From the NCBI GenBank assembly GCA_000320545.1, contig ADNK01002159.1, positions 17,144-81,143 of the forward strand: a DNA stretch of 64,000 nt. The letters are read 5' to 3'. Source of the stretch: Bigelowiella natans CCMP2755. Lineage: Eukaryota; Protista; Cercozoa. Below the pieces are notes generated by a model. The model was not told the origin of the DNA. It saw only the letters and a list, made by a program, of their open reading frames with translations, and did not search any database. Of the stretch, positions 4,343 through 61,916 are shown piece by piece; positions within the stretch are counted from its first letter, which is position 1, and every line of letters starts with the position of its first letter. The position numbers were made by a program, and so were the translations under genes.

Positions 4343-6135
4343 CAGTAGTAGTAGCGGCAACATTGATATGCAAGTGCATATAGTCGCTGTTTACTGATGA
4401 AAATGACGTTCAAACGCAGGATCAGGAGGAGTAGCGGCGGTGCAGCCCAGTAGCTTCTCTGATAGGGAATGCCGAACTGCGTAATAATTCAATTCGATTC
4501 AACATTATTCGGCCAGCATAACTCACCCCCCCCGCCACCACTCGCACCTCTCGTACAATCATCAGTACATTCCACGTTATTATTCCTGGCAAATGATGTT
4601 TTATGAATGTCGCTGAGCACGGCGCCGATAGACGTCGCTAGAGAAACAGACACACAAACCACCCTCCACGACGAGAGTTGAACTATGGTTCTCGATTCCT
4701 TTTTCTAGACGACCGTAGCAAAATCGGGAGTTCCCTTGAAAAGGGGGGGTGGGGGGGGGGGATGCAGGGAGGAAGTGCAAACCTGATCTCGTCGATTATC
4801 ATTGTTGATTATTAAGGATGGAGACCTACGTGCTGCTAGAGGAAATGCTGAGTGCTTCCGAGCCGACAGAAAATCTTAGGCGACACGGTAACGACGACGA
4901 CGACGACGACGACGATGATGATGATGATGATGATAGTGATGATGATGGCGATGATAATTGACCTTCTCCTTCCTCAATCTCCCCCCCCCCCTCTAGAGCT
5001 GATACAGAACCTTGTAGCGACGGTGGTCGCGAACCAAAAGGCGATTTCCCGTCGAGTGACAACCACCGGCAACCCGTCTGTCCTCGATGAGCTACTGCGA
5101 GCCAACGACAGCTTGATCTGGGTCATCAAATACTACCACGGTCTCGTCAATGGCACGATGCAGCGCATTAAGAAGACCAAGAAGAAACCGGCAAACAGCA
5201 GTAGTAACAGCAACAAGGGCGTTCCCCACCAGCCGTCGATGGACGACGGTGACAGTAAGAGGAGGGGCAGGAAGGATAGCGAGAAGAAGAACAGGAAGAG
5301 CCGATTTAGCAGCAGCAAGAAGAAAAAGGACACCAACGTGCCATCAGCGGGTAAAGTCAGCAAGCTGAAGAAGAAGTGGCTCTCACTGCGAAAGGAATGG
5401 CGGGAGGATAAGAGCGACAAGGCGCTGCGGAAGGAGATGAGGGCAGCGAAGAAGGCGTACGAGGCGGCCAAGGAGGCATATGAAGAAGCTGAGGACGAAG
5501 ATGAGGAGGAGGAAGAAGAGGAGGATGAGGAGCCTCGGCCCGCAGCTGGGAAGAAAAACCAGCCAAAAACATCTAGTAGAGATAGTAAATTTCGCGCGCC
5601 TGAAGCGACGCTATTCAACCTAGCCCCCCCTCCGGGAGATGGCGTTGCTGGAGCTCCTTCTTCGGCAGCAGCGTCGTCATCCTTTCAGCAGCCCCCCCCC
5701 CATCAAGCACCACAACCAGTTGTGTCTGTGCTGGACTTTGACACGACTGCTACCACGTCCACTGCGATCACCACGCCAGCTGCATCTGGGTCGTCAGCTC
5801 CAGCCGCAGGAGGAGGGGGGAGAGGAGGAGGAGGAGGAGGAGGAGAAGATCTGTCTGATCCATTCGCCGCCTTGGCCTTGCGCCACTCTGTCACAGCAGC
5901 ACCGACGACCGCCGGGCCTAATCAAGGAATTGTCGGCAATCAGCAGCAGCAGCAGCAGGCAGCTGCTGGCGGTGGCGTGAACCTGATGGATCTATTCGGT
6001 AATGACGCCACACCAGCTCCATCCCAGCAGCAGCAGCAACAACAACCAGCTCAATTTAACAATCAGCAACCAGGAGGAGGGAATAGTAATAATGGCGGTG
6101 ACCAAGGGATTGACCTGATGGGAATCTTTGGATGA
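1588..6135 (+). CDS. TOM1/TOL-like VHS-GAT endosomal/clathrin adaptor (about 14 exons)
   Basis: Exons join to MANADTSNIEDA|VVRATHEILTKPDWSANI|GICDWLKRRPSHIPQ|ALRVILSRLKHKQLSVQ|NHTIELLATLMKNCSDVRVH|...VLVKTWARE...YDQLKATGCKFP (VHS domain). The GAT domain follows (METYVLLEEML...ELIQNLV...DELLRANDSLIWVIKYY). The disordered tail has DPF and LMDLFG/DLMGIFG adaptor/clathrin-type motifs. Stop at 6133-6135. Confidence 0.9.
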
Positions 6136-6299
6136 TGATGATGATGATGATAATGTGGTGGCGTGTACGACAATTCATCGGCCTTCGAATCTTAGCAGTA
6201 GGTATTGAATAGTGGCGGAGTGCGTTGTGATGGCGATGGTGTAGTAGCTGAGTATATGAGGAATCAAATCGAAAGACAGGGAGATGCGAATGAAGGCAC

Positions 6300-6840
6300 A
6301 TACGTGTCTAGATGTGTGCGTCGCTAGATCGAACCGCCTACCCTAGCTAGCTAGCTAGCGAGTACCATGCTAGTATTGCTAGCATGACTAGATGTATCGT
6401 AGCGAAAATAATAATCATTCGTATTATTATTACTAGCTGGATAGCCAGGCATGCTAGCATGCTAGCACGTGTAGACGCTTTGCCAGCGCAACTTGCTAGC
6501 GCTAGGCGCGCACGCATGCGCCTTTTTATTTTCGCATATTCTCTAGAAATCAAGAAATGTCTGCTAGCAAGCTAGATCTAGAGATCTAGCTAGTAGCTAG
6601 CCAGAGATGTGTGTTTGCATTCGCTAGCATTTATTGCCGCTCTCATCTAGCGTATAGCTAGCTAATCGTGCCACACGCTCCACGGCTATACTAGCTATAG
6701 CTAGCTAGCACGCTAGCACGTCTAGACGTGTGTATGTGACATGCTAGCTAGCATGCACATGCGATGTGCGCTGACACTGCGTGCCGGCTAGCTATGCAAG
6801 CTAACAAAGGGCCAAACAATTCACACATAGCTAGCTGAAT
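6300..6840. other. CTAG/GCTAGC-rich palindromic tract between convergent TOM1-like and Hsp60 genes
   Basis: Very dense ctag, gctagc, catg, cacgtg and gcgc words without a fixed repeat unit. Confidence 0.8.
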
Positions 6841-7127
6841 GAAATGTAGAAATACAGACGCAGCCAAGCGAATATTTCCATCTGGTGTTCTAATTGATTA
6901 GGTCGAACTCAAGACACATGATTTAGCTATCGAAAAATGCTTTCCAAGCAGTTTTCACGATGATGACCACAACGTGAATCTCAATCCAGCTCGTCATCCA
7001 TTGAGGTATGAGGTAGTTTGATAAACGGGTAGGAGGGGTGCGACAGTGAGATAGGAGAGGGTATGTCGCACGCATACGGAAGAGATGAAGGGAATGATGA
7101 AAGTCGTCTTACGTGCACGTTAGCAGC

Positions 7128-9112
7128 TTAGAACATGCCTCCCATGCCGCCCATTCCTCCTCCAGGCATTGCAGGTGCAGCAGCAGGTTTGTCCTCTGGA
7201 ATCTCGACGATGATGGCCTCAGCCGTCATCATCAGCGACGAGACACTAGATGCGTCAAGAAGCGCGGTTCTAACCACCTTCGTAGGGTCGATGACGCCGG
7301 CCTCGATCATATCGACGTACTCGCCGCACGCCGAGTTCATGCCCTTAGTGGACATTTTCCCGTCAGCCTCCTCGAGCAGCTTGCCCACAATCACTTCAGC
7401 ATTCATGCCAGCGTTGTGGATTATCTGCTTCGCAGGGATCTGGATGGCTCGCTCCACGATCTCAACACCGGTCTTGGCCTCAAACGTCGACTCAGCCTTG
7501 AGCCCCTCCAGCATCTTGGACGCATAAAGAAGAGCGCTGCCGCCCCCGGGAAGCACGCCCTCCTCCACAGCCGCGCGGGTTGCGTTGAGTGCGTCATCCA
7601 CGCGGTCTTTCTTCTCACCGACCTCAACCTCGTTTGCACCCCCGACCTTTATCACTGCGACACCGCCGGAGAGCTTCGCAAGACGCTCGCCCAGCTTTTC
7701 CTTCTCGTAGCTGCTTTCGGTGCTGTCCATTGTCTCCTTGATCAGACCGCAGCGGGCCTCAACGTCAGCCTTAGAACCCGACCCGTCAAGGATGATGGTG
7801 TCGTCCTTCGTGGAGGTAAACTGCATGCAAGAACCGAGCATCTCGAGGGTTGTTTCCTCCAGCTTCATGCCGGTGTCAGAGGACACGAGAGTGGCGCCGG
7901 TGAGAATAGCAATGTCCTGCATGTTGGCCTTGCGGTTATCACCAAATCCAGGGGCCTTCACTGCGGTGACCTTAAGGTTTCCGCGCAGCTTGTTGAGGAC
8001 GAGGGTTGCAAGGGCCTCTCCATCGACATCCTCAGCAATGATCACGAGGTTGCGGGTGGCGCGACTGCATGCGTCAAGAATGTTCAGCATGGGCTGCATC
8101 GAAGAGATCTTGCCCTCGTAAACGAGGATGGCAGGCTTTTCCATCTCAACCTTCTGAGACTTAGGGTTGGTGATGAAGTAAGGGGAAAGGTACCCACGGT
8201 CGAACCTCATTCCCTTAACGGTCTCAAGCTCGTCCATCAACGTCTTTCCGTCCTGCACGGTGATGACACCGGAGTTTCCGACTTCCTCCATGGCATCAGC
8301 GATGAGATTTCCGATGGCGACGTCGTTGTTGGCCGAAATGGTGGCCACCTGGGCGATCTCCTCCTTGGTGGTGATCAGCTTTGTTGACGATTTCAGCGAT
8401 TGGACAACCTGCTCGACTGCACTGACCATTCCCTTGCGGAGCTCCATTGGATTCATGCCGGCTGCCACGGACTTAACTCCCTCGGAATAGAGAGCACGAG
8501 CAAGCACGGTGGCGGTGGTGGTTCCATCACCAGCCTTGTCGTTGGTCTTGCTTGCAACCTCGCGAACGAGCTGTGCGCCCATGTTTTCGTACTTATCAGA
8601 AAACTCAATCGACTTGGCAACGGTAACGCCATCTTTGGTGATTTTTGGTTTGCCAAAAGCCTGCTCGATCAGCACGTTGCGTCCTTTTGGACCCAGAGTG
8701 GTCTGCACAGCATCAGCGAGCTTGTTCACTCCGCTCAGCATCTCCGCACGTCCTTCATCCTATTTTGTGGTGTTCAAATAATCAGACGCGCCGTTTCGTA
8801 TGGCTAGATGAGTCAGATCAGGACGCTAGCGAGGAAAGCTCTCATCATTACTAACAGGAGCTTGCCAAAATACACTAGTTCTACCAAAATGCAAAATAAA
8901 TAATATGGGAACGCAGAAAGACATATGATTTGAGTATCACGACTGATAAGATGTCGAATCCTAGAATAGAGATCGCCATGAAGTCTTTCATGCATGAGAA
9001 TTACCCCAAACTTGATGTCCTTCCCAGAGGACATCATTCGAACGTTTTTGCCGGCCTGGGACCTTGCCTTGAGCCCGAGCGCGCGGGTGACTCTCTGCAC
9101 AGTTCTGTTCAT
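7128..9112 (-). CDS. HSP60: Mitochondrial chaperonin 60 (Hsp60/Cpn60), 2 exons (9112-9005, 8759-7128)
   Basis: [21 protein letters not shown] and [12 protein letters not shown] motifs and a GGM tail. Exon 1 encodes an Arg/Ser-rich presequence [29 protein letters not shown] followed by GKDIKFG|DEGRAEML, joined by a GT-AG intron at 8760-9004. Confidence 0.97.
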
Positions 9113-9545
9113 CCTGCTAGCTTCCTAATTTAGGGAAAGAGCAATATGGTGTTAGCACAGAGTGCGGGGCTTTGTTTTCCACAAATTCGCTCGCGTGTTC
9201 GTGCCACACAGTGTCAATGGTAGCTGTCCCAAGAGAGCAAGAGAGCATGAATATCAAATGAAATTCTCCATAGCAATAGCAAAGAGCGAGATAGAACGCG
9301 AATTGCGAAGAGCATGCGTGTGTGGTGGGTAGGATGACAGCCGATATCGGGCGGTTGGGTGTTGAGGGTGGCACCTGCTTTCGGTATGTGGTGGAAGGTG
9401 CGCACGGTATTGCCGAACGGATATGTAGTTTCATTCCGACGACACGCTTTTGATGGAGAAACACTTCGTCAGTCGTCGGGCATTTTTCATATTTTTTATA
9501 AATCCCGATATTACCGGATGTATTACCTCCAGCCCCTGTTCCTCC

Positions 9546-9570
9546 CGAATTCTCCAGAACCTGCAGAAAG
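9546..9570. promoter_or_regulatory. Possible degenerate heat-shock element in the Hsp60/Dabb bidirectional promoter
   Basis: cGAAt-tCTCc-aGAAc-cTGCa-gAAAg: five in-phase pentamers, two perfect nGAAn and three with one mismatch, lying between two stress genes. Confidence 0.3.
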
Positions 9571-9845
9571 GAGCTCGGCGTGAGAAAGCCGTTTAATGGT
9601 GAGGGAAAATTACCCCTTTTTCAGTGTATGACAAGGAATTCTTGAAGTCGTTGAGATCAATCTTACTTGGTTTTCTGTTGAAGAAGATATTTTCCGGGTT
9701 ACTTCGGGGATTTTATTAATATTCTGTCGGAAATTCGGAACCCATGCTGCTGCTGCTTCGGAACCCAGTGCAACACGTGGCTCTCCTATACCCTACCTGC
9801 CTTCGCCGCTCCGTTTGACCTTCTCAAGCCCTTTTGACAAGAGCC

Positions 9846-10749
9846 ATGCCGATAGTTCACATCGTTTTGTTTAAGGTAGCTCTGACTGGTACCTATCATG
9901 TGTGTTGCCTCCTTTCAGTATCATTCTCATGCATTTACGATGGTATTATCGCAGTTGGAATCACCCGAGGACAGCAAGGTCGTGAGGACAAACCTTTACC
10001 CAACATTTGAACGAGATGGAGTCATAATCACATGGCAATGTCACACAAAACCAGGTGCTCGCAATGCTAAAGGAGGGATCGCAGCTCTTATCTAAAATCC
10101 CGGGTAACTAATCGGTCACATCGACGCCAACATTACATCTTCGTCGTATGGAGTTTGATTCGGTCTTTGATAAAGGTGTCATAAGCGCAAGTGGTGGGCC
10201 GAACTACACGAAGAGAGGAAAGTAAAAATATTTTTCCGGCTCATGTCTGCATCCTTGTTCAATCACACTAGCGTGGGAAGTGTCATTCTTTTGTCGGTTA
10301 GATTTATCATAGACTTTTTAACTTGTAAGCATGTCTTTAAGTACCGTGGACTTTCAGTTCTCTTTCTTTGCAAAACAACGCTTCCTCTAATTTTTATATA
10401 CATCAGAGGTTACAACTATGGAATAAGCATGGTTTTTGAATCCAAAGAAGCTGAGGCTGCGTACCAGGTAACATAACCAGGATATATGGCGAACAGCGAA
10501 TAACATCAACATCGCATTAAGAATTTGATTCGCATTCATTTTTGCAGTAACTATATCTTCGCAAGTGTAATCTCTTAGTATTCATTCTGTGTCAAAATTA
10601 TGCAGGTTCATCCAGACCATGTTAAATTTGTGAAAGAGCGTGTCAGGCCTGCGCTGTCAAAGGCATCCGACCCTGTGCTGGCTGTTGATTTTGAAGACAT
10701 GTCTATATCAACAACGTCAACAACGTCCAGCCCACAGTCCAAGGTTTAG
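9846..10749 (+). CDS. Stress-responsive A/B-barrel (Dabb) protein, 6 small exons
   Basis: MPIVHIVLFK|LESPEDSK|VLAMLKEGSQLLSKIPG|VISASGGPNYTKRGK|GYNYGISMVFESKEAEAAYQ|VHPDHVKFVKERVRP...VLAVDFE...QSKV*. The Dabb hallmarks HIVLFK, IPG, Y-x-x-HPxH and VDF are present. Missed by the ORF track because the exons are short. Confidence 0.9.
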
Positions 10750-51867: not shown

Positions 51868-52323
51868 GAGCTCATTTCCACCAACAAAACCACCTTCTTC
51901 CTCCTCTTCCTCCTCCTTCCTCCTCCTCCTCCTCCTGAAACACTGCGTATTCCGTCCCCGCACTACCACGGCCCTCCTACCTCAGATTATCGTGGCTCTC
52001 CTTGATGCGGACGTTGTGCTCACCTTGTACACTAGCGGTGCTATTCATAGCGGCCTTATATACAAAGCAATCATGAACGGCATCGCGTATTTCGTGTACT
52101 TGCAGTCATCTTTCATCATCCTTTCCAAGATGGGCGTTGTGTCGCACACGGTGGGAAACTCCCTTCGCAGGTCGTTGGCAAGCTCTAATGGCGGTGGTGG
52201 CGATGGTGATGGTGATAGTGATGGTGATGGTGATGGTGATGGTGCCTGTCTCATGAATTACCGAAACTGCTTCGGTTCTCTCTCGAGATGGATGAGAAGG
52301 GCTCTGAGAGAGAGAGGGGGGGG

Positions 52324-52363
<40 letters not shown>

Positions 52364-52708
52364 GACGATTTCTCCGAGCATCGTTTCGTCGCAGGACATA
52401 CATTGGTGGTGTTTTTAGTTCCGATTATATCACATCAATCAAATCTCATTGTATATGAACAAATCGCCAAGGGAGTATACAAGAAGATTTTACCAGAGCT
52501 ACGAGCTCGCTTTGCTACACGGAGCTTTGCTGACAATTTTGCTATTTTGATGATGTGCAGGCCAGTATGCATCGGCTTTGCCGTTGTTTACTTCCAAAAC
52601 AAAGTCACGGAAATGGCGATTATGGGGATCGTTCTCGCTTGTGTCGGTGCTGGAGCGTATTCAGTATTTAAGGCAACTGAGATAAAGAAGAAGGAGCATT
52701 CTAAGTAA
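49688..52708 (+). CDS. Triose-phosphate-translocator (TPT/SLC35E-like) family transporter
   Basis: MPTK|EASS...AWFFLWYGASVYCN, VLRATEPLFA, SNIGFTFRSILAK, LSKMGVVSHTVGNSLR|RPVCIGFAVVYFQN and GAGAYS. No N-terminal targeting extension. Confidence 0.88.
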
Positions 52709-53829: not shown

Positions 53830-56800
53830 TTAATTGTCACAATCATCCTCCCTGACACAATAGTCATAGCCATCCTCCCTGACACAATAGTCATAGCCAT
53901 CCTCCCTGCTCCAATCGGCAGCACTTTGAAGTAGCAACAACGCAGTGGGGCGCTCCTATGAAGTGTGTTACATTCACCAATGTGGTCAAGCGCGAGGAGA
54001 AACATTGCAAACTTTGAACTGTCGCTAATGTACACATTGAGTAATAACTATCTCCACTGATTCAAAATCCCTTCAGTTTCGTTCCGTGTTTTCTTACCGT
54101 GGCATCGACAGAAACCTTTTCATTCTCGTTCCCCTTTTCCAAAATCAACACCAAACTGAATTTAGTCCACATGCAATCGCAGGGTAGGAGGGCAAATCAT
54201 GGGGTTTATCGACGAACCTTCGCCATGCTAGAATTCTCTCTTTCGGAGACTTTTTTTAGTTTGCGTAGTAGGTTCACTGCGCATATCTTTGGAATTCCCA
54301 ATTCACATAGAATCTCAACATCGCAGTCTCCAAGCATGGAGTAATCTAAATCTTCTTTCAGAATTACCTAAGATCAAGGTGCCATCAATTGAACATCATA
54401 GCATGCTGCACTATGTAACGTGTCCATTCGAGTTTGAAGCTCACTGTCACACTACCGACCTCACTCATATGGCTACAACTTCAAATTTGCAGGTGCGGTT
54501 TTTATCGTAATAACTACATCTAATTGTATTCCGCTTCGGCTGAATTGCTGTTCGTTGTACCTCGATGCATTCGTTCCACCTCTTGTTTTCAACATGAACA
54601 AACCCCTTGATGAAGTCTACAACATCGTGCTTGCTCCATGAGGCTAATGGCTTTTCATTCTTGAGTTCTGGTCGCTAATATAATGAGCATAAATTGTTAC
54701 CTTTATCAATTCAGATGCCATACTTTAATAAGCTCATGTAACTTGTAAAAACGTTAGATTTTGATCGCCTCCTTTCGAAATTAGGAATTCTCACGAAAAC
54801 ACAAAAAAACGTATAACGACAGGCATGAAACAGAATAAATTTGAAATGTTAAAATTTAAACCTTGATCGTAAATGTAAAGCAACGTTTGATTAATGCCTC
54901 AGCTCGAGGAGGCAAGCTGGAATCTTGATTTAACTAACCGCAACCAAAGTTAACAATATCAAATATTTTCCTAAAATGTTCTAACATTCAAGGCACCTTG
55001 AGAGGCATTTTTCCTTTCTTAAGCTCTTCAATGTACTCCCTGGGTCCTCCCAGCTCAAAATGCGGTTGCTTTCCTTTGTTCAATATCTCCCATACAGTAA
55101 CACCGAACATCCAAACATCTGACTTCTGGCTGAATTCCTTTTGTATGAGGCTCTCAGGCGCGCTCCAAGCCCATGGTAATTTAGTCGTTTGGTCAGTCTG
55201 CATGTATATGGTGCTGTTCCCCTGCACAAACATAATGTAGAAGAATGCGAATTATCCGATGCCGTTTATATCTTATTCTGCAGATCTTATTCTGCAGCCA
55301 CTGCCATTATATGAGAAACATATACTGCTCTATGATACACTAATTTATCGACACCTTGCCGCTCCTAGACAATCCGTAATCGCCAAGAACCACTGATTTG
55401 TCCGCTTTCATAAACAGGTTGCGACACGCTATATCTCTATGTACCAGCCCGCCTGAGACGCAGCAAAATTTGAATAAAAATGTCGATATATTTCGAGTGT
55501 TTATTTGGTAATAACCAACTCCGAATGCACACATCGTTATATAATTTCACACCAGTTGATCGACTATTTATTACACAGCTTTACGTATTGATGATACACT
55601 GATGACCATACTCAACCTCCCCACCGCAACTAATAGTATCAATCATTACTTTTATGGAAAGCTGCGATCCCTTTGAGAACGCCCCCCACAATCTGCCAGA
55701 ATCTATCCGGCGAGGTCAGATCTTCTTTTCCATGTAAGGCGTCCAAACTACCTGTAATAACCTACTCATCTTATGCTGACAACGAATGATGCTGTGTTCA
55801 AATTTTGACGAATGAAAAAAGGAGATACTACGAGTTAACGCCTCCAATCGGTATTGCAAATTGTTTAGCTTTATTGCTATTGCCTTTGTCGCAGAATTCA
55901 CTAACAAAGTGAAGGCGCTTGTCGATAGTAACCACACCGTACAACAAGAGAAGGTTCGGATGCGGCTTTAATTTGGAGAAGTTCAAGAGCTGCAATTGGA
56001 CGAATTCTCAATTTTGAGTAGGATATAAAATAAATAAGATCAATCAAACAGGCATCTAGCGAAATATGATCGACAGTGCGATTGAAAGGAGGGATAGTGC
56101 GACTTGCCTCAGTAAGAAAGTCTTGGCTAAGTTTGGTCTCATTGCCAACTCTTTTCATTGCAGCAGCCTAACGATGATGTTCATTAGTATTATATCCATC
56201 GTTTCTGGTGTTGCAATCTATGCTGCAGTACGGAATGAATAAACAGACCGTCTTCTTGCCTTTGATACAGACTTCGACCTTATATACCTCTCCGAACTGC
56301 CCCTTACCGAGGTCGCCGATCTTCACCACCTAGGGAGGCCACAGGTAGCGAGGAAATATTTGGATACCATGAGCAACAATCTTAGATCAAACCCATGAAA
56401 TCACATATACGATGATCATGGAATTCATTGCTTTCGAGATAAATATGCTACCTCGTGAGGGATAAATACCCTTACATCCCCAAAGCTTAGTGATGGAGAA
56501 GCCGCACCTAACCCAGATGCATTAGCAAGCGTTTTCTCGGCCTCGCGGCGGCGGCGTGCCTCCAGCTCCTGCTCTGTCATTTTTTGATTGCTTCCAGCCA
56601 TCGATTGCTGCTCAGCTCGCGTTCTTTCTTGTTCCTCCTCGAGCCGTCTTTTGACCTCTTGGAACTGCAGGGAGGCTTTCCTCTCTTTCGCCAGCGCTTT
56701 TTTCATTTTCTGCACCTCAACTCGCAGTACCTGTGCCCTCTTTTCGGCCTCTGCGTCCTCCTCCTGAGTCTTCGCCTTCTCCTTGGCCAGGGCCTCCCGG

Positions 56801-59394
56801 AGGGCTTTGGCCGCGGTCTTTTGCTGTTCCCTCTCTTCCATCATCTTGCTGAGTTTGGAGCGCATTTCCTCCTCCTTCTTCTTCTGCTCCTCTAGTTGCT
56901 GTTGTGAGAGCTGTTTATTCTGCTGTGCGAGGGCTTCGCGCTCAGAGGCGATGCGTTTCTGTTCCTCTTCGAGTTGCTGCTGGAAAGCTTTGAACTTACT
57001 GGCCGCCGCCCTTTCGCTCTCGAGAGCTTGCTGCAGCTCCTGCATCTGTTGCTGCATTTTCTCCGCTTGTTGCTGCGATCGAACCTTGGCCTCAGAAGAA
57101 GAAGGAGTCGTGCCCAAGTAAGGACCCTTGAACGAGGGCTGAGATCTGGAGGCGTGCCCTAGGTGGAGGATGGTATGCGCTACCTGATCATGGTTTTAAT
57201 GAATTGGAGATAAAAAGTACAAATGTACAGGACGATCACAAACATGGATATGCGTATCTGTGCGTGCATGCGCGCGCGCGTGTCGCTGTGTGTCTGAATT
57301 CAGGTATACTGTACATATCTCACGATTCTATCGCTGCACACCTTCGTAAACTCCTTCTTCTCAAAGAAATCCACTGTCACGAAGAGATCGTGGTCCATAA
57401 CACCAATCGCCTTGCACCCATTCAGAAAGCGCTTGATGTTTTCCATTTTGAAATACGGCTGATTCATGCGGTTGATGTGTTTGATTGTGCGAGGTTTGAT
57501 CTTATTCACAAGTTTGCAAAGAATGTCGCCCTTCAATAGCTGCTCGAAGCCGCTCAAATTCTCCCCCATTACTTCGTTGATCCACCTAGACAAGTTTTCA
57601 AAAACAACTTTAAATTTCACCCTAGCACCGAAACTTTTGACCTACTTTAGAGCTTGGGCCTGAAGATCACCCGTAAAAACTACTGCAGTTCCCATGCTTG
57701 TATTAACCCCTACCTTCAAATCCTTCTTCATCCCTGGGGCCTAGAAGTGCATATCAATTTGTTGTTGTTCAGATACACAGTGATGCAACATCTCTTTTGG
57801 GGAGGTGTTACCCTTTTGTCGTCCATAGATGTAGATGCTGGTCTTATTTCTTCTCCACTTTGTACAGTAGCCTTCCTCTCGAGCTCATGAGGAATTTTCT
57901 GATTCTCTTTATCATTGCGGAGAAAATCAACGACATCGTTATGACCGCTCTTGTTAGCCCAGTCCAATGCGGTTTGATCTTATGCAAAAAGTAAACAACG
58001 ATTACGTGGCACAACAGCAGTATCAAGAACCATCATCTAGCCAACAAATCAACCTACCATCAACAATACAATCACAAAACACTCAACCAACCTACTAACC
58101 ATCCGAAATTACTTTGTGTACTATTTCTGCTACAGCTAATCCTACTACCACTACGACTACTACTTCTATTACTCACTACTCACTACTCAATCCTATTCCT
58201 AATGCTACTACCACTACTGCTACCAACACAAACTACCATCATCCACCCAACACAGCAACTACTGCCTAAATGCTAGCAATGCTGCAGCTGCTACCCACCT
58301 TTGTTGTTCTTCGCCTCGATGTTTGCCTTCATACCAACCAGATACTTGACTGTCTCCAAATGGCCATCAATAGAGCCGCAAATCAACGGCGTCGAACCTG
58401 GTGGTAGGTGATCCCATTTTAGACAAAAAACAACAATGACACATGCATGCAACATCAACAACCGTGCTCAAACTAACATCTGATTGATTCATGTAGGACA
58501 AATATTACTACTTCTATCAACATCATAATGCTTAGTTTACCAGTGCTGCTACTCACTACTCAATGCTAACACATCTCCTACTCCTCTTACTCACTACGCA
58601 AAACCATTACGAACACCCCTATCACTACTGCTACCAACAAAAATTACCCATCATCCACCCAACACAGCAGTAGTCCTAGATACTAACAATGCTGCAGCTG
58701 CTACCCCACCGGATTTTTCCTTCGCCTCGATGTTTGCCTTCATACCAACCAGGTACTCGACAATCTCCAAATGGCCATCGCAACATCCAAAAAACAACGG
58801 CGTATTCCCTGGTAGCATGTGATCCCATTTTTGACAAAAAAACAACAATAAAATATAAATGCAACATCAGCAACATCTAATTGATTCTCGTAAGCCAAAT
58901 ATTACTACTTCTATCAACATCATAATACTTAGTTTACCAGTGCTGCTACTCACTACTCAATACTAACAGAACTCCTACTCCTCTTACTCACTACGCAAAA
59001 CCATTACGAACACCCCTATCACTACTGCTACCAACAAAAAGTACCATCATCCACCCAACACAGCAACTACTGCCTAAATGCTAGCAATGCTGCAGCTGCT
59101 ACCCACCTTTGTTGTTCTTCGCCTCGATGTTTGCCTTCATACCAACCAGATACTTGACTGTCTCCAAATGGCCATCAATAGAGCCGCAAATCAACGGCGT
59201 CGAACCTGGTGGTAGGTGATCCCATTTTAGACAAAAAACAACAATGACACATGCATGCAACATCAACAACCATCCTCAAAACAACATTTAATAATTAACC
59301 TCTGCAAGTCTTTCAGAACCATGATGAACCACAACCCACATACACAGCAACCTTCCTGTGTGCTCTTTTCTGACACTGCTGCTGCTGCTACTAT

Positions 59395-59434
<40 letters not shown>

Positions 59435-59788
59435 GTAACTGCTACTAATAATCAAGTGCTCAATGCTACTAAAATGGCTACTCTCTCACTGCCCAATCCT
59501 GTTGCTACTACTTCTACTCTACTGCTACTTCTACTACTACTACAACAACTACAACAACTACTACTACTACTACTATAACTACTATAAGTCCTAATGCTAC
59601 TGAAAATTGATCCAACTCTTCTGTCATTCACCCAATGCTGCAACTACAGCTTGTACTGCCTAATAGCAATGCTGCCGCTGCTGCTATCCACCTGTGTTGT
59701 CCTTCGCCTCGATGCTAGCCTTTTGCTCAATTAAACGCTTCAGATGAGCGAGATCGTTGTTTGTTACCGCTTCGAAGATGCCAGACAT
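53830..59788 (-). CDS. Multidomain kinase: ankyrin repeats - calponin-homology domain - coiled coil - tyrosine-kinase-signature domain - SAM
   Basis: ANK exons (GSTPLICGSIDGHLETVKYLV). CH domain (WINEVMGE...LKGDILCKLVNKIKP...FKMENIKRFL...DLFVTVDFFE). Q/E/K coiled coil at 57117-56530. Kinase motifs LGKGQFGEV, AAMK, HPNLL, HRDIACRN, DYGLSR, LPWAWSAPESL and SDVWMFGVTVWEI. SAM domain WSKHDVVDFI...EDLDYSML...ELGIPK...LLRKL. Confidence 0.9.
53844..53908. repeat. 27-bp tandem repeat (2.4 copies) at the kinase C-terminus
   Basis: catcctccctgacacaatagtcatagc x2 + catcctccctg; the minus strand reads REDGYDYCV x2. Confidence 0.92.
58234..59271. repeat. Tandem array of ~400-bp ankyrin exon+intron modules (A-B-A)
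   Basis: 58234-58463 and 59042-59271 appear identical (offset 808). Intron blocks at about 58499-58643 and 58896-59040 are near-identical. The 99-nt exons are at 58299-58397, 58710-58808 and 59107-59205. Confidence 0.93.
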
Positions 59789-60252: not shown

Positions 60253-61916
60253 ATGGGGGCCGCACTGGCCTCATTGCTCCGGCCTTGGCTCGAACCTCTG
60301 AAGTCACTCGCGTCCTTTCCGTTCTCCATCATCGATTCAGCCAGGCAAACGCTCTACTCGTTCTTTTTCGGCACGCCCAAGGGGCGATATGATGATTCCC
60401 AAGGGGACATGACTGACACTTCCAACTCCCCCTACTACAAGAGCTACACCATAAACCAGGTGAGAGAGTATACCGAGGCATTCCATCGAGATGGATTCGT
60501 GGTGGTAGATGGGGTGTTGAGCGCAGACGAGATCGCACTGTCAAAGGAGGAGGTGTGGCAGTACTTGCAGGTTTAATCCAAAAAGCACACACATTTCCAC
60601 AATCGTATGTCGTCGCCGTCGCCGATATCTCGATATCACAAAACCCACCCTTTCGCGCGAGCTAGCCTCACATGGGTCAGAAATCCACCGCTGCTTGTAT
60701 AGAAACCGCCAATAAAACACTTTCATTCTTAGCTACGACTCCACCCCATCTCTTTCAATTCAGGCGAAGGGCGACGGAATTCTGAGAGATCGACCAGAGA
60801 CTTGGGATGAAAAAAATTGGCCAAAGGAAATCTGTAGAAATGGAGGATTCATGGGCCGGTTTCCATACATTCGGAGGCTGTACTCAATCGACAAGACGAT
60901 GATAAATAAACAGCCGCAGGCGTGGAGGAACCGCCAGAATCCAAAGGTGTACAACGTGTTTCGCAACCTACTCGATTCGAAAAAACTATGGGTCAGTCTG
61001 GACCGATATGGCATTATGCGCCCAACAAAAGTGCGTGTTACTGGAGATGAGAGGAAGTGCCCGCCGTCTTCTTCTCCCGAGGTAAAGCTCGTGGACAAAA
61101 GCAGTGAATGGGCTACAAAGAAGGAGTGGCTTCATTGGGACCTCAATCCCTTCCATTTCGCCACTTCCGCCGCCGGATTCGGTTTTAACGCGGAGGTGAG
61201 TCGCGATGCAATTGCAAAGAAGTATGGCTGGACCCGCGTGCAAGGCCTTGTGACCATTACAGACTGCCCTGAGCCGGTAGGTGGTTTTCACTGTGTGAAG
61301 GGATTTCAAGGTAAGCGTTTCGAGGCCTGGAGGCGAGAGCACATGGAAACGTATGGAAAGGAGAAAGGTGTTGCGACAAGGAACTTTGTCGAGATTCCCT
61401 CCGAGGATCCGATGAGGAGGGAAATTACCAAAGTGCCCATACGAGCCGGCTCCTTACTAGTTTGGAACAGCCAGGTCATGTGAGCATCGGTTCAACGAGA
61501 ATGAGTATTCGCGAGGAATGAAGGATAATACCCAATGGATGGAGATCTTTCATACGAGAGAACAATAATATTAGATTGGGCCATTACTCTTCTGATCACT
61601 TGATGCTCTCGTTTACAAAAATATATCACCATTAAAGCAGACTATACCATGCATGATACTATGGAACTTATATCGATATTTCCGCCCCCTAACCCTTATG
61701 TTGTTGGATCAGCTTCCTCACGGGAACTTTCCGAACAGTAGCGAGAGATTTCGGATGGTGCAGTACATCAAGATGATTCCCGTGGAGGATCCGCGTGAGT
61801 TTCAGCCTATATTAGGTCTGGACGATAGGCGTCTTAAGAAAAACTCTTTTTTCCCTAATGGTTTCACTCCTTCGGACCTTGGAGCAAGGCTGTTTGGAAT
61901 AAAACCGTGGGAATAA
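60253..61916 (+). CDS. Phytanoyl-CoA dioxygenase (PhyH)-like 2OG-Fe(II) oxygenase, 3 exons
   Basis: FHRDGFVVVDGVLS, HxD in WLHWDLNP, VQGLV..TD, GGFHCVKG and GSLLVWNSQ|LPHGNFPN...RMVQYIKM (distal His and Arg). Confidence 0.88.

What the first reader, a model, noticed from the sequence alone, without database searches (positions are those of the whole stretch)
53830..59788. Tyrosine-kinase-signature protein with ANK-CH-coiled coil-kinase-SAM architecture in a probable alga
Seen: catalytic loop HRDIACRN, P+1 loop KLPWAWSAPESL and SDVWMFGVTVWEI. Established: HRD-x-A-x-RN and P-x-x-W-x-APE are the TK-group signatures (Ser/Thr kinases have HRDLKxxN), and this P+1/subdomain IX wording resembles ACK-type kinases. 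TKs are mainly holozoan and only sporadic elsewhere. Here the kinase is joined to ankyrin repeats, a calponin/transgelin-type CH domain, a ~190-aa coiled coil and a C-terminal SAM, a combination I do not recognise from any named family. DFG is replaced by DYG. Inference: a cytoskeleton-linked phosphotyrosine signalling component built by lineage-specific domain shuffling.
Basis: partly seen in the sequence, partly recalled or inferred. Interest (0 to 1): 0.8.

Follow-up and report, generated by a model that had tools for sequence, protein, structure and literature searches.

The report
Tyrosine-kinase-like multidomain kinase in Bigelowiella
A real, expressed 19-exon gene of the alga Bigelowiella natans encodes an ankyrin, calponin-homology, coiled-coil, kinase and SAM protein whose kinase has tyrosine-kinase-type active-site loops; it belongs to a chlorarachniophyte-only kinase family and gained its calponin and coiled-coil part very recently by copying a piece of another gene.

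Summary
Window 53830-59788 (minus strand) holds a 19-exon, 933-codon gene of Bigelowiella natans. The public JGI model 55301 covers only its 3' end. HRDIACRN, DYG, KLPWAWSAPESL and SDVWMFGVTVWEI are all present. ANK, CH (calponin-type) and kinase are supported by Pfam and PDB. The SAM is below Pfam threshold, but an AlphaFold model matches SAM domains almost exclusively.

It is one of at least 12 paralogs (ANK-kinase-SAM) that share the same loops. The genome has 46 HRD-x-A-x-RN sites, and relatives occur in Lotharella and Amorphochlora. The scan had already flagged other TK-type kinases elsewhere in this genome.

The best PDB and database hits are all animal tyrosine kinases. A 52-sequence tree joins the chlorarachniophyte clade to animal TKs (100/98). 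That link collapses to a TK / TKL / chlorarachniophyte trichotomy once the two diagnostic loops are removed.

Only this paralog has CH plus the long coiled coil. That 1.2-kb block, introns included, is 98% identical to part of a separate CH-coiled-coil gene on contig C3186, which points to a recent exon-shuffling copy.

Tyrosine specificity and the actin link are untested. I found one SH2 and one marginal PTP match. Verdict: a new lineage-specific variant of the known non-holozoan TK-like kinases; moderate interest.

The parts
59692..59788 (-). Exon 1: start codon and N-terminal ankyrin cap (MSGIFEAVTNNDLAHLKRLIEQKASIEAKDNT-)
   Evidence: ORF and GT donor read from the sequence. The N-terminus is homologous to the N-terminus of a paralog transcript, L043. 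There is no direct transcript evidence for this exon.
59107..59205 (-). Exon 2: one 33-aa ankyrin repeat (99 nt, phase 1)
   Evidence: Pfam Ank E 2.8e-5; AG/GT sites read. It is identical to exon 4 and lies in a tandem exon-plus-intron unit.
58710..58808 (-). Exon 3: one ankyrin repeat (99 nt)
   Evidence: Pfam Ank E 1e-5; splice sites read.
58299..58397 (-). Exon 4: one ankyrin repeat, a copy of exon 2
57812..57978 (-). Exon 5: last ankyrin repeat plus linker. This exon is specific to the window copy.
   Evidence: Transcript L013 135-305 aligns at 98.8% and is spliced to exon 6. It is absent from contig C3186.
57646..57740 (-). Exon 6: start of the CH region, and the first exon of the block shared with C3186
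   Evidence: L013 304-408. Homology to C3186 begins exactly at the acceptor site.
57342..57585 (-). Exon 7: core of the calponin-type CH domain
   Evidence: Pfam CH 7.5e-13 and 3.9e-14; PDB calponin-1 E 2.5e-15. L013 is 100% identical to the window here and 97.2% to C3186.
56452..57183 (-). Exon 8: last CH helix, roughly 190-aa coiled coil, and the linker to the kinase. It is one uninterrupted 244-codon exon.
   Evidence: Open frame and heptad test. The 57076-56536 part is 98% identical to C3186, and the breakpoint at 56536 is in frame. Both transcript pieces anchor in this exon.
54862..56329 (-). Exons 9-15: the kinase domain (56249-56329, 56108-56167, 55884-55989, 55650-55751, 55355-55452, 54997-55221, 54862-54933). 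It has GKGQFG, AAMK, the alphaC Glu, HRDIACRN, DYG, an activation-loop IY, LPWAWSAPE and SDVWMFG.
   Evidence: The transcript is spliced exactly as listed, with two GC-AG introns. P0152 scores 172 bits on PF07714 and 125 on PF00069. The top 60 PDB hits are all tyrosine kinases.
54218..54674 (-). Exons 16-17 (54561-54674, 54218-54367): divergent SAM domain
   Evidence: AF2 pLDDT 82, a five-helix bundle. Foldseek hits are almost all SAM domains (Shank2/3, Ph, Scm, CNK2, ZAK), with target TM 0.7-0.8. SHANK2 SAM gives E 0.0018 by sequence. Pfam is below threshold.
53830..54133 (-). Exons 18-19 (54098-54133, 53830-53955 including the stop): conserved acidic C-terminal tail. Intron 53956-54097 is retained in transcript L013 and spliced in JGI model 55301.
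   Evidence: P0151 compared with P0152; alignment to paralogs; sequence read.

Best explanation
This is a transcribed 19-exon gene of the chlorarachniophyte Bigelowiella natans. It encodes a soluble protein of about 933 aa. In order, the protein has roughly 4.5 ankyrin repeats, a single calponin-type CH domain, a roughly 190-aa coiled coil, a complete protein kinase domain, a divergent SAM domain and an acidic tail.

The kinase belongs to a chlorarachniophyte-specific clade. B. natans has at least 12 close ANK-kinase-SAM paralogs and 46 HRD-x-A-x-RN loops, and relatives occur in Lotharella and Amorphochlora. Members of this clade carry tyrosine-kinase-type catalytic (HRD-I-A-C-R-N) and P+1 (L-P-W-A-W-x-A-P-E) loops, DYG in place of DFG, and usually a Tyr in the activation loop.

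Shown here: the gene structure, the domains, the family, the TK-like sequence affinity, and the origin of the CH-coiled-coil module. That module is a recent (98% identical), internally shortened copy of the 5' part of a separate CH-coiled-coil gene (contig C3186), inserted in frame between the ankyrin part and the kinase of an older ANK-kinase-SAM gene.

Inferred: the enzyme is active, because every catalytic residue is present. It phosphorylates tyrosine or is dual-specific. It is switched on by oligomerisation through the coiled coil and SAM, with trans-phosphorylation of the activation-loop Tyr. The ankyrin and CH modules place it on partner proteins, possibly cytoskeletal ones.

Its deep position is best described as an independent branch of the TK/TKL supergroup, comparable to the 'group B' non-holozoan TKs, and not as a member of any animal TK family.
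For: Organism and model: cluster member P0151 is jgi/Bigna1/55301.

Splicing: transcript scaffold L013 aligns at 96-100% from the last ANK exon through CH, coiled coil, kinase, SAM and 3' UTR. The exon lengths sum in frame to 933 codons.

Domains.

Family: 13 strong exon matches in the genome. Eleven paralog loci carry HRD(I/V)ACRN and D(Y/F)G, and most also show the PW.W.APE loop. The paralogs have ANK-kinase-C-terminal-domain order and no CH, and the paralog transcript L043 shows the same order.

Census: 46 HRD-x-A-x-RN sites, 0 in the control, and 0 of the Src-type loop.

Distribution: only Bigelowiella, Lotharella and Amorphochlora relatives, followed by named animal TKs. A TKL from the same genome instead hits plant STY/HT1/CTR1 and MAP3K9.

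PDB: the top 60 hits are all TKs, for the whole domain and for the P+1 exon.

Tree: chlorarachniophyte clade 100/99; together with animal TKs 100/98, excluding the sampled TKLs.

Shuffling: window 56536-57742 matches C3186 at 98% with introns included. The breakpoints fall at an acceptor site and in frame within exon 8, and there is a 2.7-kb internal deletion relative to C3186. No other paralog contig has a CH match.
Against: With the catalytic-loop and P+1-loop columns removed, the TK link dissolves into a trichotomy. AU tests then reject neither a TK sister (p 0.45) nor a TKL sister (p 0.36) position.

TKL sampling was narrow (MLK, Raf-like and STY types only), and amoebozoan TKs were not included.

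The phmmer scores of the domain against TKs (53-125 bits) and TKLs (48-89 bits) overlap.

Only one SH2 match and one marginal classical PTP match were found. These six-frame scans of an intron-rich genome give lower bounds only.

The transcript scaffold has a 10-N gap inside the coiled coil, and the piece before the gap ends in C3186-specific sequence. No single uninterrupted cDNA therefore spans ANK to SAM. Exons 1-4 have no transcript support.

The AF2 model of the kinase domain failed (pLDDT 45).

There is no biochemical evidence of any kind.
Confidence: 0.7

Rival explanations
1. The kinase is functionally a Ser/Thr or dual-specificity TKL-type enzyme, and its catalytic and P+1 loops converged on the TK pattern. 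The similarity to animal TKs would then be motif-driven and would say nothing about a phosphotyrosine system.
For: The TK + chlorarachniophyte grouping depends on the roughly 40 loop columns. AU does not reject a TKL sister position. Some TKL references score as high as TKs, for example CTR1 at 89 bits and an SH2-TKL at 83 bits. SH2 and classical PTP matches are nearly absent. Tyr-phosphorylating kinases of Dictyostelium and Entamoeba are described as more TKL-like (PMC4053784).
Against: In the loop-free tree the sampled TKLs form their own clade (97/95) that excludes the chlorarachniophyte clade. All 60 best PDB hits, and all named database hits down to about E 1e-19, are TKs. The Lys of HRDLKxxN and the GT of the Ser/Thr P+1 loop are both replaced, and this holds across a clade shared by three genera.
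Confidence: 0.25
2. The five-domain architecture is an artefact. On this reading the CH-coiled-coil segment belongs only to the C3186 gene, and it appears here through mis-assembly or through chimeric transcript assembly across a shared repeat.
For: Transcript scaffolds L013 and L014 are demonstrably chimeric around a 10-N gap and contain C3186-specific sequence. JGI annotated only a 234-aa 3' fragment.
Against: The two genomic copies differ by about 2% over 1.2 kb, and the window copy lacks 2.7 kb that C3186 has, so they are distinct loci. L013 400-645 is 100% identical to the window copy and 97.2% to C3186, and it is spliced to the window-only exon 5. The second transcript piece reads from shared coiled-coil sequence across the 56536 breakpoint into the window-only linker and kinase. 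Exon 8 is an uninterrupted 244-codon frame that joins both sides.
Confidence: 0.05
3. The kinase is a true member of an animal TK family, ACK/TNK2-like as the P+1 wording suggests, acquired by horizontal transfer from a holozoan.
For: ACK1 is co-best with TrkC for the P+1/subdomain IX exon at about 52 bits. ACK also has a SAM domain (own knowledge).
Against: The whole-domain best hits are Eph, Abl, FAK and CSK at about 30-35% identity, not ACK. Pfam finds no SH3 or CRIB, and the SAM is C-terminal. The chlorarachniophyte kinases form one deep clade outside the sampled animal TKs and do not nest within them. The genes are intron-rich with conserved intron positions across the paralogs.
Confidence: 0.03

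Closest known systems
Non-holozoan 'group B' tyrosine kinases (Suga et al. 2012/2014, PMC4342544) and amoebozoan PTKs (Acanthamoeba, PMC4053784; Protostelium, PMC5804921)
   Same: These are TK-type catalytic residues in protists far from animals. They show lineage-specific expansions and unusual domain combinations. Six Acanthamoeba PTKs also carry a SAM domain.
   Different: The host here is a rhizarian alga (chlorarachniophyte), for which I found no description in the searchable literature. The clade has a signature of its own (HRD-I-A-C-R-N, DYG, PWAW). The SH2 and PTP partners that are abundant in Acanthamoeba are nearly undetected here. Relatedness to those groups was not tested, because no amoebozoan sequences were in the tree.
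Eph receptor tyrosine kinases
   Same: Eph kinases are the best whole-domain PDB matches (about 114 bits). As in Eph receptors, the kinase domain is followed by a C-terminal SAM domain.
   Different: This protein has no ectodomain or transmembrane segment. Instead it carries N-terminal ANK, CH and coiled-coil modules. In the tree it lies outside the animal TK clade.
ACK1/TNK2
   Same: The wording of the P+1 loop and subdomain IX is similar, and ACK1 is co-best for that exon. Both proteins have a SAM domain in the same polypeptide as the kinase.
   Different: ACK is SAM-kinase-SH3-CRIB. This protein is ANK-CH-CC-kinase-SAM with no SH3 or CRIB. The whole-domain similarity is not highest to ACK.
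ZAK/MAP3K20 (TKL; kinase, leucine zipper, SAM) and ankyrin-kinases such as ILK and TNNI3K
   Same: These combine a TK/TKL-supergroup kinase with a coiled coil and SAM (ZAK) or with N-terminal ankyrin repeats. MAP3K20 was the TKL nearest to the TK + chlorarachniophyte clade. The ZAK SAM is among the structural matches.
   Different: Those kinases have Ser/Thr-type HRDLKxxN and GT..W.APE loops. The domain order differs, and none has a CH domain.
Calponin/transgelin single (type 3) CH domains
   Same: They are the best PDB matches for the CH region: calponin-1 at E 2.5e-15, then transgelin, IQGAP/Rng2 and Vav.
   Different: Here the CH domain sits inside a kinase. It was copied from a CH-long-coiled-coil gene of the same genome.

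Membership tests
Protein kinase, PK_Tyr_Ser-Thr (PF07714) | Full-length match above the curated cut-off, with the catalytic residues present (GxGxxG, VAIK Lys, alphaC Glu, HRD, Asn, D-x-G, APE) | tested here: met
   P0152 scores 172 bits over profile positions 6-251 of 258, against 125 bits for PF00069. The motifs were read.
TK group (conventional tyrosine kinases) | Catalytic loop HRD-[LIV]-A-x-R-N (or R-A-A-N) in place of HRD-L-K-x-x-N | tested here: met
   HRDIACRN lies at 55441-55418. It is conserved in the 11 paralog loci examined (Ile or Val after HRD) and, as HRDLACRN, in Lotharella.
TK group (conventional tyrosine kinases) | P+1 loop P-x-x-W-x-A-P-E in place of G-T-x-x-W-M-A-P-E | tested here: met
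   L-P-W-A-W-S-A-P-E lies at 55182-55147.
TK group (conventional tyrosine kinases) | Phylogenetic grouping with holozoan TKs to the exclusion of TKLs | tested here: inconclusive
   Support is 100/98 with all columns. Without the two loops the result is a trichotomy. AU gives p 0.45 for a TK sister and p 0.36 for a TKL sister. The reference sampling was limited.
TK group (conventional tyrosine kinases) | Tyrosine-specific phosphotransfer | not testable with these tools
   This needs a kinase assay or phosphoamino-acid analysis.
Canonical pTyr writer-reader-eraser circuit | SH2/PTB readers and classical PTP erasers co-occur in the genome | tested here: inconclusive
   There is one PF00017 SH2 match and one marginal PF00102 match at 25 bits. 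Six-frame scans of an intron-rich genome give lower bounds only.
ACK/TNK2 family | SAM-kinase-SH3-CRIB architecture, with ACK as the closest kinase domain | tested here: not met
   Pfam finds no SH3 or CRIB and the SAM is C-terminal. The whole-domain best hits are Eph, Abl and FAK. Only the P+1 exon is co-best with ACK1.
TKL group | Ser/Thr-type loops (HRDLKxxN, GT..W.APE) and nesting among TKL families | tested here: not met
   The loops are TK-type. The sampled TKLs form a 97/95 clade without it. A sister position is not rejected.
CH domain (PF00307), calponin type | Pfam match above the cut-off, with nearest relatives among single-CH proteins | tested here: met
   53 bits against a cut-off of 26. 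Calponin-1 and calponin-2 and transgelin top the PDB list.
SAM domain | Five-helix SAM fold, or a sequence-profile match | tested here: met
   Sequence evidence is weak: Pfam is below threshold (SAM_4 E 0.12, and paralog SAM_1 E 0.025), and SHANK2 SAM gives E 0.0018. By predicted structure, the model has pLDDT 82 and five helices, and its Foldseek hits are almost all SAM domains, with TM 0.7-0.8 and rmsd 2.1-3.0 A.
Ankyrin repeats | Tandem 33-aa repeats that match Pfam Ank models | tested here: met
   Exons 2-4 each score above the cut-off. The transcript N-terminal piece gives Ank_2 7e-12.

The most novel reading that the evidence does not exclude
Chlorarachniophyte algae (Rhizaria) may have evolved or retained their own large clade of genuinely tyrosine-specific kinases, with at least 46 genes in B. 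natans. This clade would be separate from the holozoan and amoebozoan TKs and would work almost without SH2 or classical PTP partners. It would then represent an independent phosphotyrosine system, with new members still being built by exon shuffling, as in this gene.
Probability: 0.3. Interest if true: 0.75.

Novelty: new variant of a known kind. Interest (0 to 1): 0.55.

Why it matters
Tyrosine kinases are usually discussed as a holozoan innovation, with extensions into Amoebozoa, and with scattered 'group B' forms elsewhere. A well-defined, expanded clade with TK-type active-site loops in a rhizarian alga adds a data point far from animals. It bears on two open questions: when Tyr-specific catalysis arose, and whether it arose more than once. 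It also makes those questions testable with a few recombinant domains. The locus is in addition an unusually clean, recent and datable example of exon shuffling. A 98%-identical copy of the 5' part of a CH-coiled-coil gene was spliced in frame into an ANK-kinase-SAM gene, and the donor gene is still present. Finally, the public gene model covers only the last quarter of the gene, so kinome or domain-architecture surveys based on that model will miss this protein.

Tried and rejected
1. Exon-sized queries in the search for homologous proteins are useless because of its length window. I used the representative search on the 75-aa P+1 exon instead. That search returned P0002, and through it P0152 and the transcript contigs.

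2. I first set the E-value cut-off too strict and repeated the search with a family profile.

3. AF2 of the whole kinase + SAM protein with a 7-row alignment failed for the kinase part (pLDDT 45). I therefore made no structural TK/TKL comparison.

4. Two scans of metagenome contigs, one for the exon 1-exon 2 junction and one for exon 1, found nothing. The 5' ANK exons rest on genomic reading and on homology to paralog L043.

5. I had guessed a kinase exon at 54714-54848. The transcript contradicts it, and exon 15 joins exon 16 directly.

6. I had read 57303-57641 as a single CH exon. That is wrong: CH spans three exons.

7. Literature searches for tyrosine kinases in Bigelowiella, chlorarachniophytes or Rhizaria found nothing specific. 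The original genome paper was not in the searchable library.

Whole-domain work used database proteins (P0152 and relatives) and transcript loci by reference.

9. I considered and rejected the ideas that this is an ACK orthologue, a horizontal transfer from animals, or an assembly chimera (see the rival explanations).

Full report
**What is there**

The window is contig C1578 of a 91.4-Mb, 3736-contig assembly. A representative-library search with the 75-aa P+1 exon returned a 100%-identical protein. Its 90% cluster contains jgi/Bigna1/55301 of Bigelowiella natans, so the organism is that chlorarachniophyte alga. Two earlier follow-up notes of this scan name the same organism.

The JGI model has 234 aa and covers only the C-lobe, the SAM and the tail. 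The public annotation therefore does not show the architecture.

**Gene structure**

A 2824-nt transcript scaffold from an independent JGI transcriptome (L013) aligns to the minus strand as a spliced mRNA at 96-100% identity. It runs from the last ankyrin exon through CH, coiled coil, kinase, SAM and 3' UTR.

I refined the junctions against the genome and read the 5' exons directly. This gives 19 exons between the ATG at 59788 and the stop at 53832-53830.
- The exon lengths sum to 2802 nt, which is 933 codons plus the stop, with consistent phases.
- Two introns are GC-AG (donors at 56107 and 55883).
- The last intron is retained in L013 and spliced in the JGI model. The same pair of C-terminal forms exists for paralogs.
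- Exons 1-4 each encode one ankyrin unit. They lie in tandem exon-plus-intron units of about 400 nt.
- Exons 1-4 have no transcript support. The exon-1 N-terminus is, however, homologous to the N-terminus of a paralog transcript.

Exons were searched by reference, and whole-domain analyses used database proteins and transcript loci.

**A caveat on transcript continuity**

L013 and its sister L014 each contain a 10-N gap inside the coiled coil. The piece before the gap ends in about 50 nt that match contig C3186 and not the window.

The first piece carries window-specific sequence. Exon 5 is absent from C3186, and exon 7 is 100% identical to the window against 97.2% to C3186. The second piece starts 30 nt before the divergence point and reads into the window-only linker and kinase.

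Both pieces anchor in the same uninterrupted 244-codon genomic exon (57183-56452). A single mRNA is therefore strongly indicated, but it is not shown by one continuous cDNA.

**Domains**

- Ankyrin and CH pass the Pfam cut-offs.
- The CH is closest to calponin-1, calponin-2 and transgelin (E 2.5e-15), then to IQGAP/Rng2 and Vav.
- Exon 8 has a heptad pattern over about 190 residues: a/d hydrophobicity is 0.40 against 0.22 +/- 0.03 in shuffles.
- The kinase has every catalytic residue and scores 172 bits on PF07714 against 125 on PF00069.
- The SAM is divergent, and Pfam does not reach threshold. SHANK2 SAM is the best PDB sequence hit (E 0.0018, full length).
- An AF2 model of the 89-aa C-terminal region (pLDDT 82, five helices) matches SAM domains almost exclusively in Foldseek, with target TM 0.7-0.8.

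**Family**

The P+1 exon has 12 further matches in the genome at 58-68% identity, all with the same exon limits.
- Eleven examined loci all carry HRD(I/V)ACRN and D(Y/F)G (one is DFG); most also show PW.W.APE and SD(I/V)WMFG in a single frame.
- Their layout is ANK repeats, short linker, kinase, and a SAM-like C-terminus.
- DYG is therefore a family trait and not a lesion.
- Genome-wide, the degenerate pattern for HRD-[LIVM]-A-x-R-N-[LIVM] hits 46 sites (control 0). Nearly all are HRD-I/V-A-C-R-N. The Src-type loop has none.
- First-stage notes on other pieces of this genome had flagged several such kinases.
- Outside Bigelowiella the profile finds Lotharella globosa (41% identity; HRDLACRN, DYG, FPWAWTAPE) and Amorphochlora. 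After those come only named animal tyrosine kinases: FAK, Fer/Fes-like SH2 kinases, ErbB, Yes and Ret.

**TK or TKL?**

By sequence similarity the domain sides with TKs. The 60 best PDB chains are all tyrosine kinases, for the whole domain (Eph, Abl, FAK, CSK, EGFR) and for the P+1 exon (TrkC, ACK1, TrkA, CSK). A TKL from the same genome (L028, HRDLKSLN) instead retrieves plant STY/HT1/CTR1 kinases and MAP3K9.

I built a careful ML tree of 52 kinase domains:
- 17 chlorarachniophyte sequences;
- 12 named animal TKs;
- 14 TKLs;
- STE, NEK, CAMK and bacterial outgroups.

The tree gives a chlorarachniophyte clade (100/99). It joins that clade to the animal TKs, excluding all sampled TKLs, at 100/98.

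This grouping could be driven by the very motifs under discussion, so I removed the catalytic-loop and P+1-loop columns and rebuilt the tree. The result is a trichotomy of animal TKs (87/89), TKLs (97/95) and the chlorarachniophyte clade (100/99). AU tests reject neither a TK sister (p 0.45) nor a TKL sister (p 0.36) position.

So the clade is not nested in the sampled TKLs, and it is not inside any animal TK family. Its sisterhood to TKs rests on the diagnostic loops. This matches what the literature calls group B or non-holozoan TKs (PMC4342544). The trees did not include amoebozoan TKs or several TKL families.

**Origin of the architecture**

Among the paralog contigs only this one has a CH match. 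The only other similar CH match lies on contig C3186.
- Window 56536-57742 (exons 6-8 and their introns) is 98% identical to C3186 5453-6118 plus 8858-9398.
- C3186 carries an expressed gene with the same CH followed by a much longer coiled coil and no kinase.
- Homology starts exactly at the acceptor of exon 6. It ends in frame inside exon 8, where the window continues with a linker homologous to the pre-kinase linker of the paralogs.
- Relative to C3186 the window copy lacks 2.7 kb of coiled-coil sequence.
- The kinase itself is at most 67% identical to its nearest paralog.

The conclusion is that an old ANK-kinase-SAM gene recently received a shortened copy of the 5' part of a CH-coiled-coil gene.

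**Mechanism (inferred)**

The catalytic residues are complete. Most family members also conserve an I-Y in the activation loop.

From this I infer an active kinase that is regulated by oligomerisation through the coiled coil and SAM and by trans-phosphorylation. The ankyrin and CH modules would serve as docking surfaces.

Tyr or dual specificity is suggested by the loops (established knowledge of kinase subdomains VIb and VIII). It is untested.

The genome scan found one canonical SH2 ORF and one marginal classical PTP match. These counts are lower bounds.

**Verdict**

This is a new lineage-specific variant of a known kind (protist TK-like kinases), with a documented recent exon-shuffling origin. 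Interest is moderate.

Noticed in passing
window 56107 and 55883 (minus strand): Two of the 18 introns of this gene are GC-AG (donors GCAAGT and GCAATA). Both are confirmed by the transcript alignment.
   Followed up: partly
window 53956-54097; proteins P0151 and P0152; paralogs P0012/P0153 and P0159/P0160: The last intron is retained in some transcripts and spliced in others. This gives two alternative C-terminal tails, and the same pair of forms recurs in paralogs.
   Followed up: partly
G000 contig C3186 (L015+L027), about 5454-10643 on the + strand: An expressed gene with a calponin-type CH domain followed by a very long coiled coil and no kinase. It is the apparent donor of the CH-coiled-coil block. 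Transcript assemblies L013 and L014 are chimeric between it and the window gene.
   Followed up: partly
whole genome G000: There are 46 sites encoding HRD-[LIVM]-A-x-R-N, almost all with Cys at x (HRDIACRN), and none of the Src-type HRDLRAAN. Several sit in long intronless ORFs, for example C1415, C1311, C777, C784, C1505 and C2945.
   Followed up: partly
G000:C1637:41450-42178 minus strand (L042:951-1679): This is the only canonical SH2 match (PF00017, E 3e-11) found in the genome. It lies at the N-terminus of a 242-aa ORF, on a contig that also carries a TK-type kinase about 30 kb away.
   Followed up: no
window 58177-59284: The ankyrin exons lie in tandem exon-plus-intron units of about 400 nt whose introns carry (GTA)n microsatellites. 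Exons 2 and 4 are identical. The transcript from another sample carries a different ankyrin repeat at this position, which suggests rapid repeat turnover.
   Followed up: partly
protein P0224 (Guillardia theta, partial): A cryptophyte kinase fragment with HRGLGARN and PMRWMAPE fell next to the TK and chlorarachniophyte clades in both trees.
   Followed up: no
window 51992-52708 plus strand: The neighbouring ORF matches the triose-phosphate transporter family (PF03151, E 1e-7) and contains a GD-repeat and an ER-repeat stretch. The gene upstream of the kinase (60253-61483, + strand) has no Pfam match.
   Followed up: no
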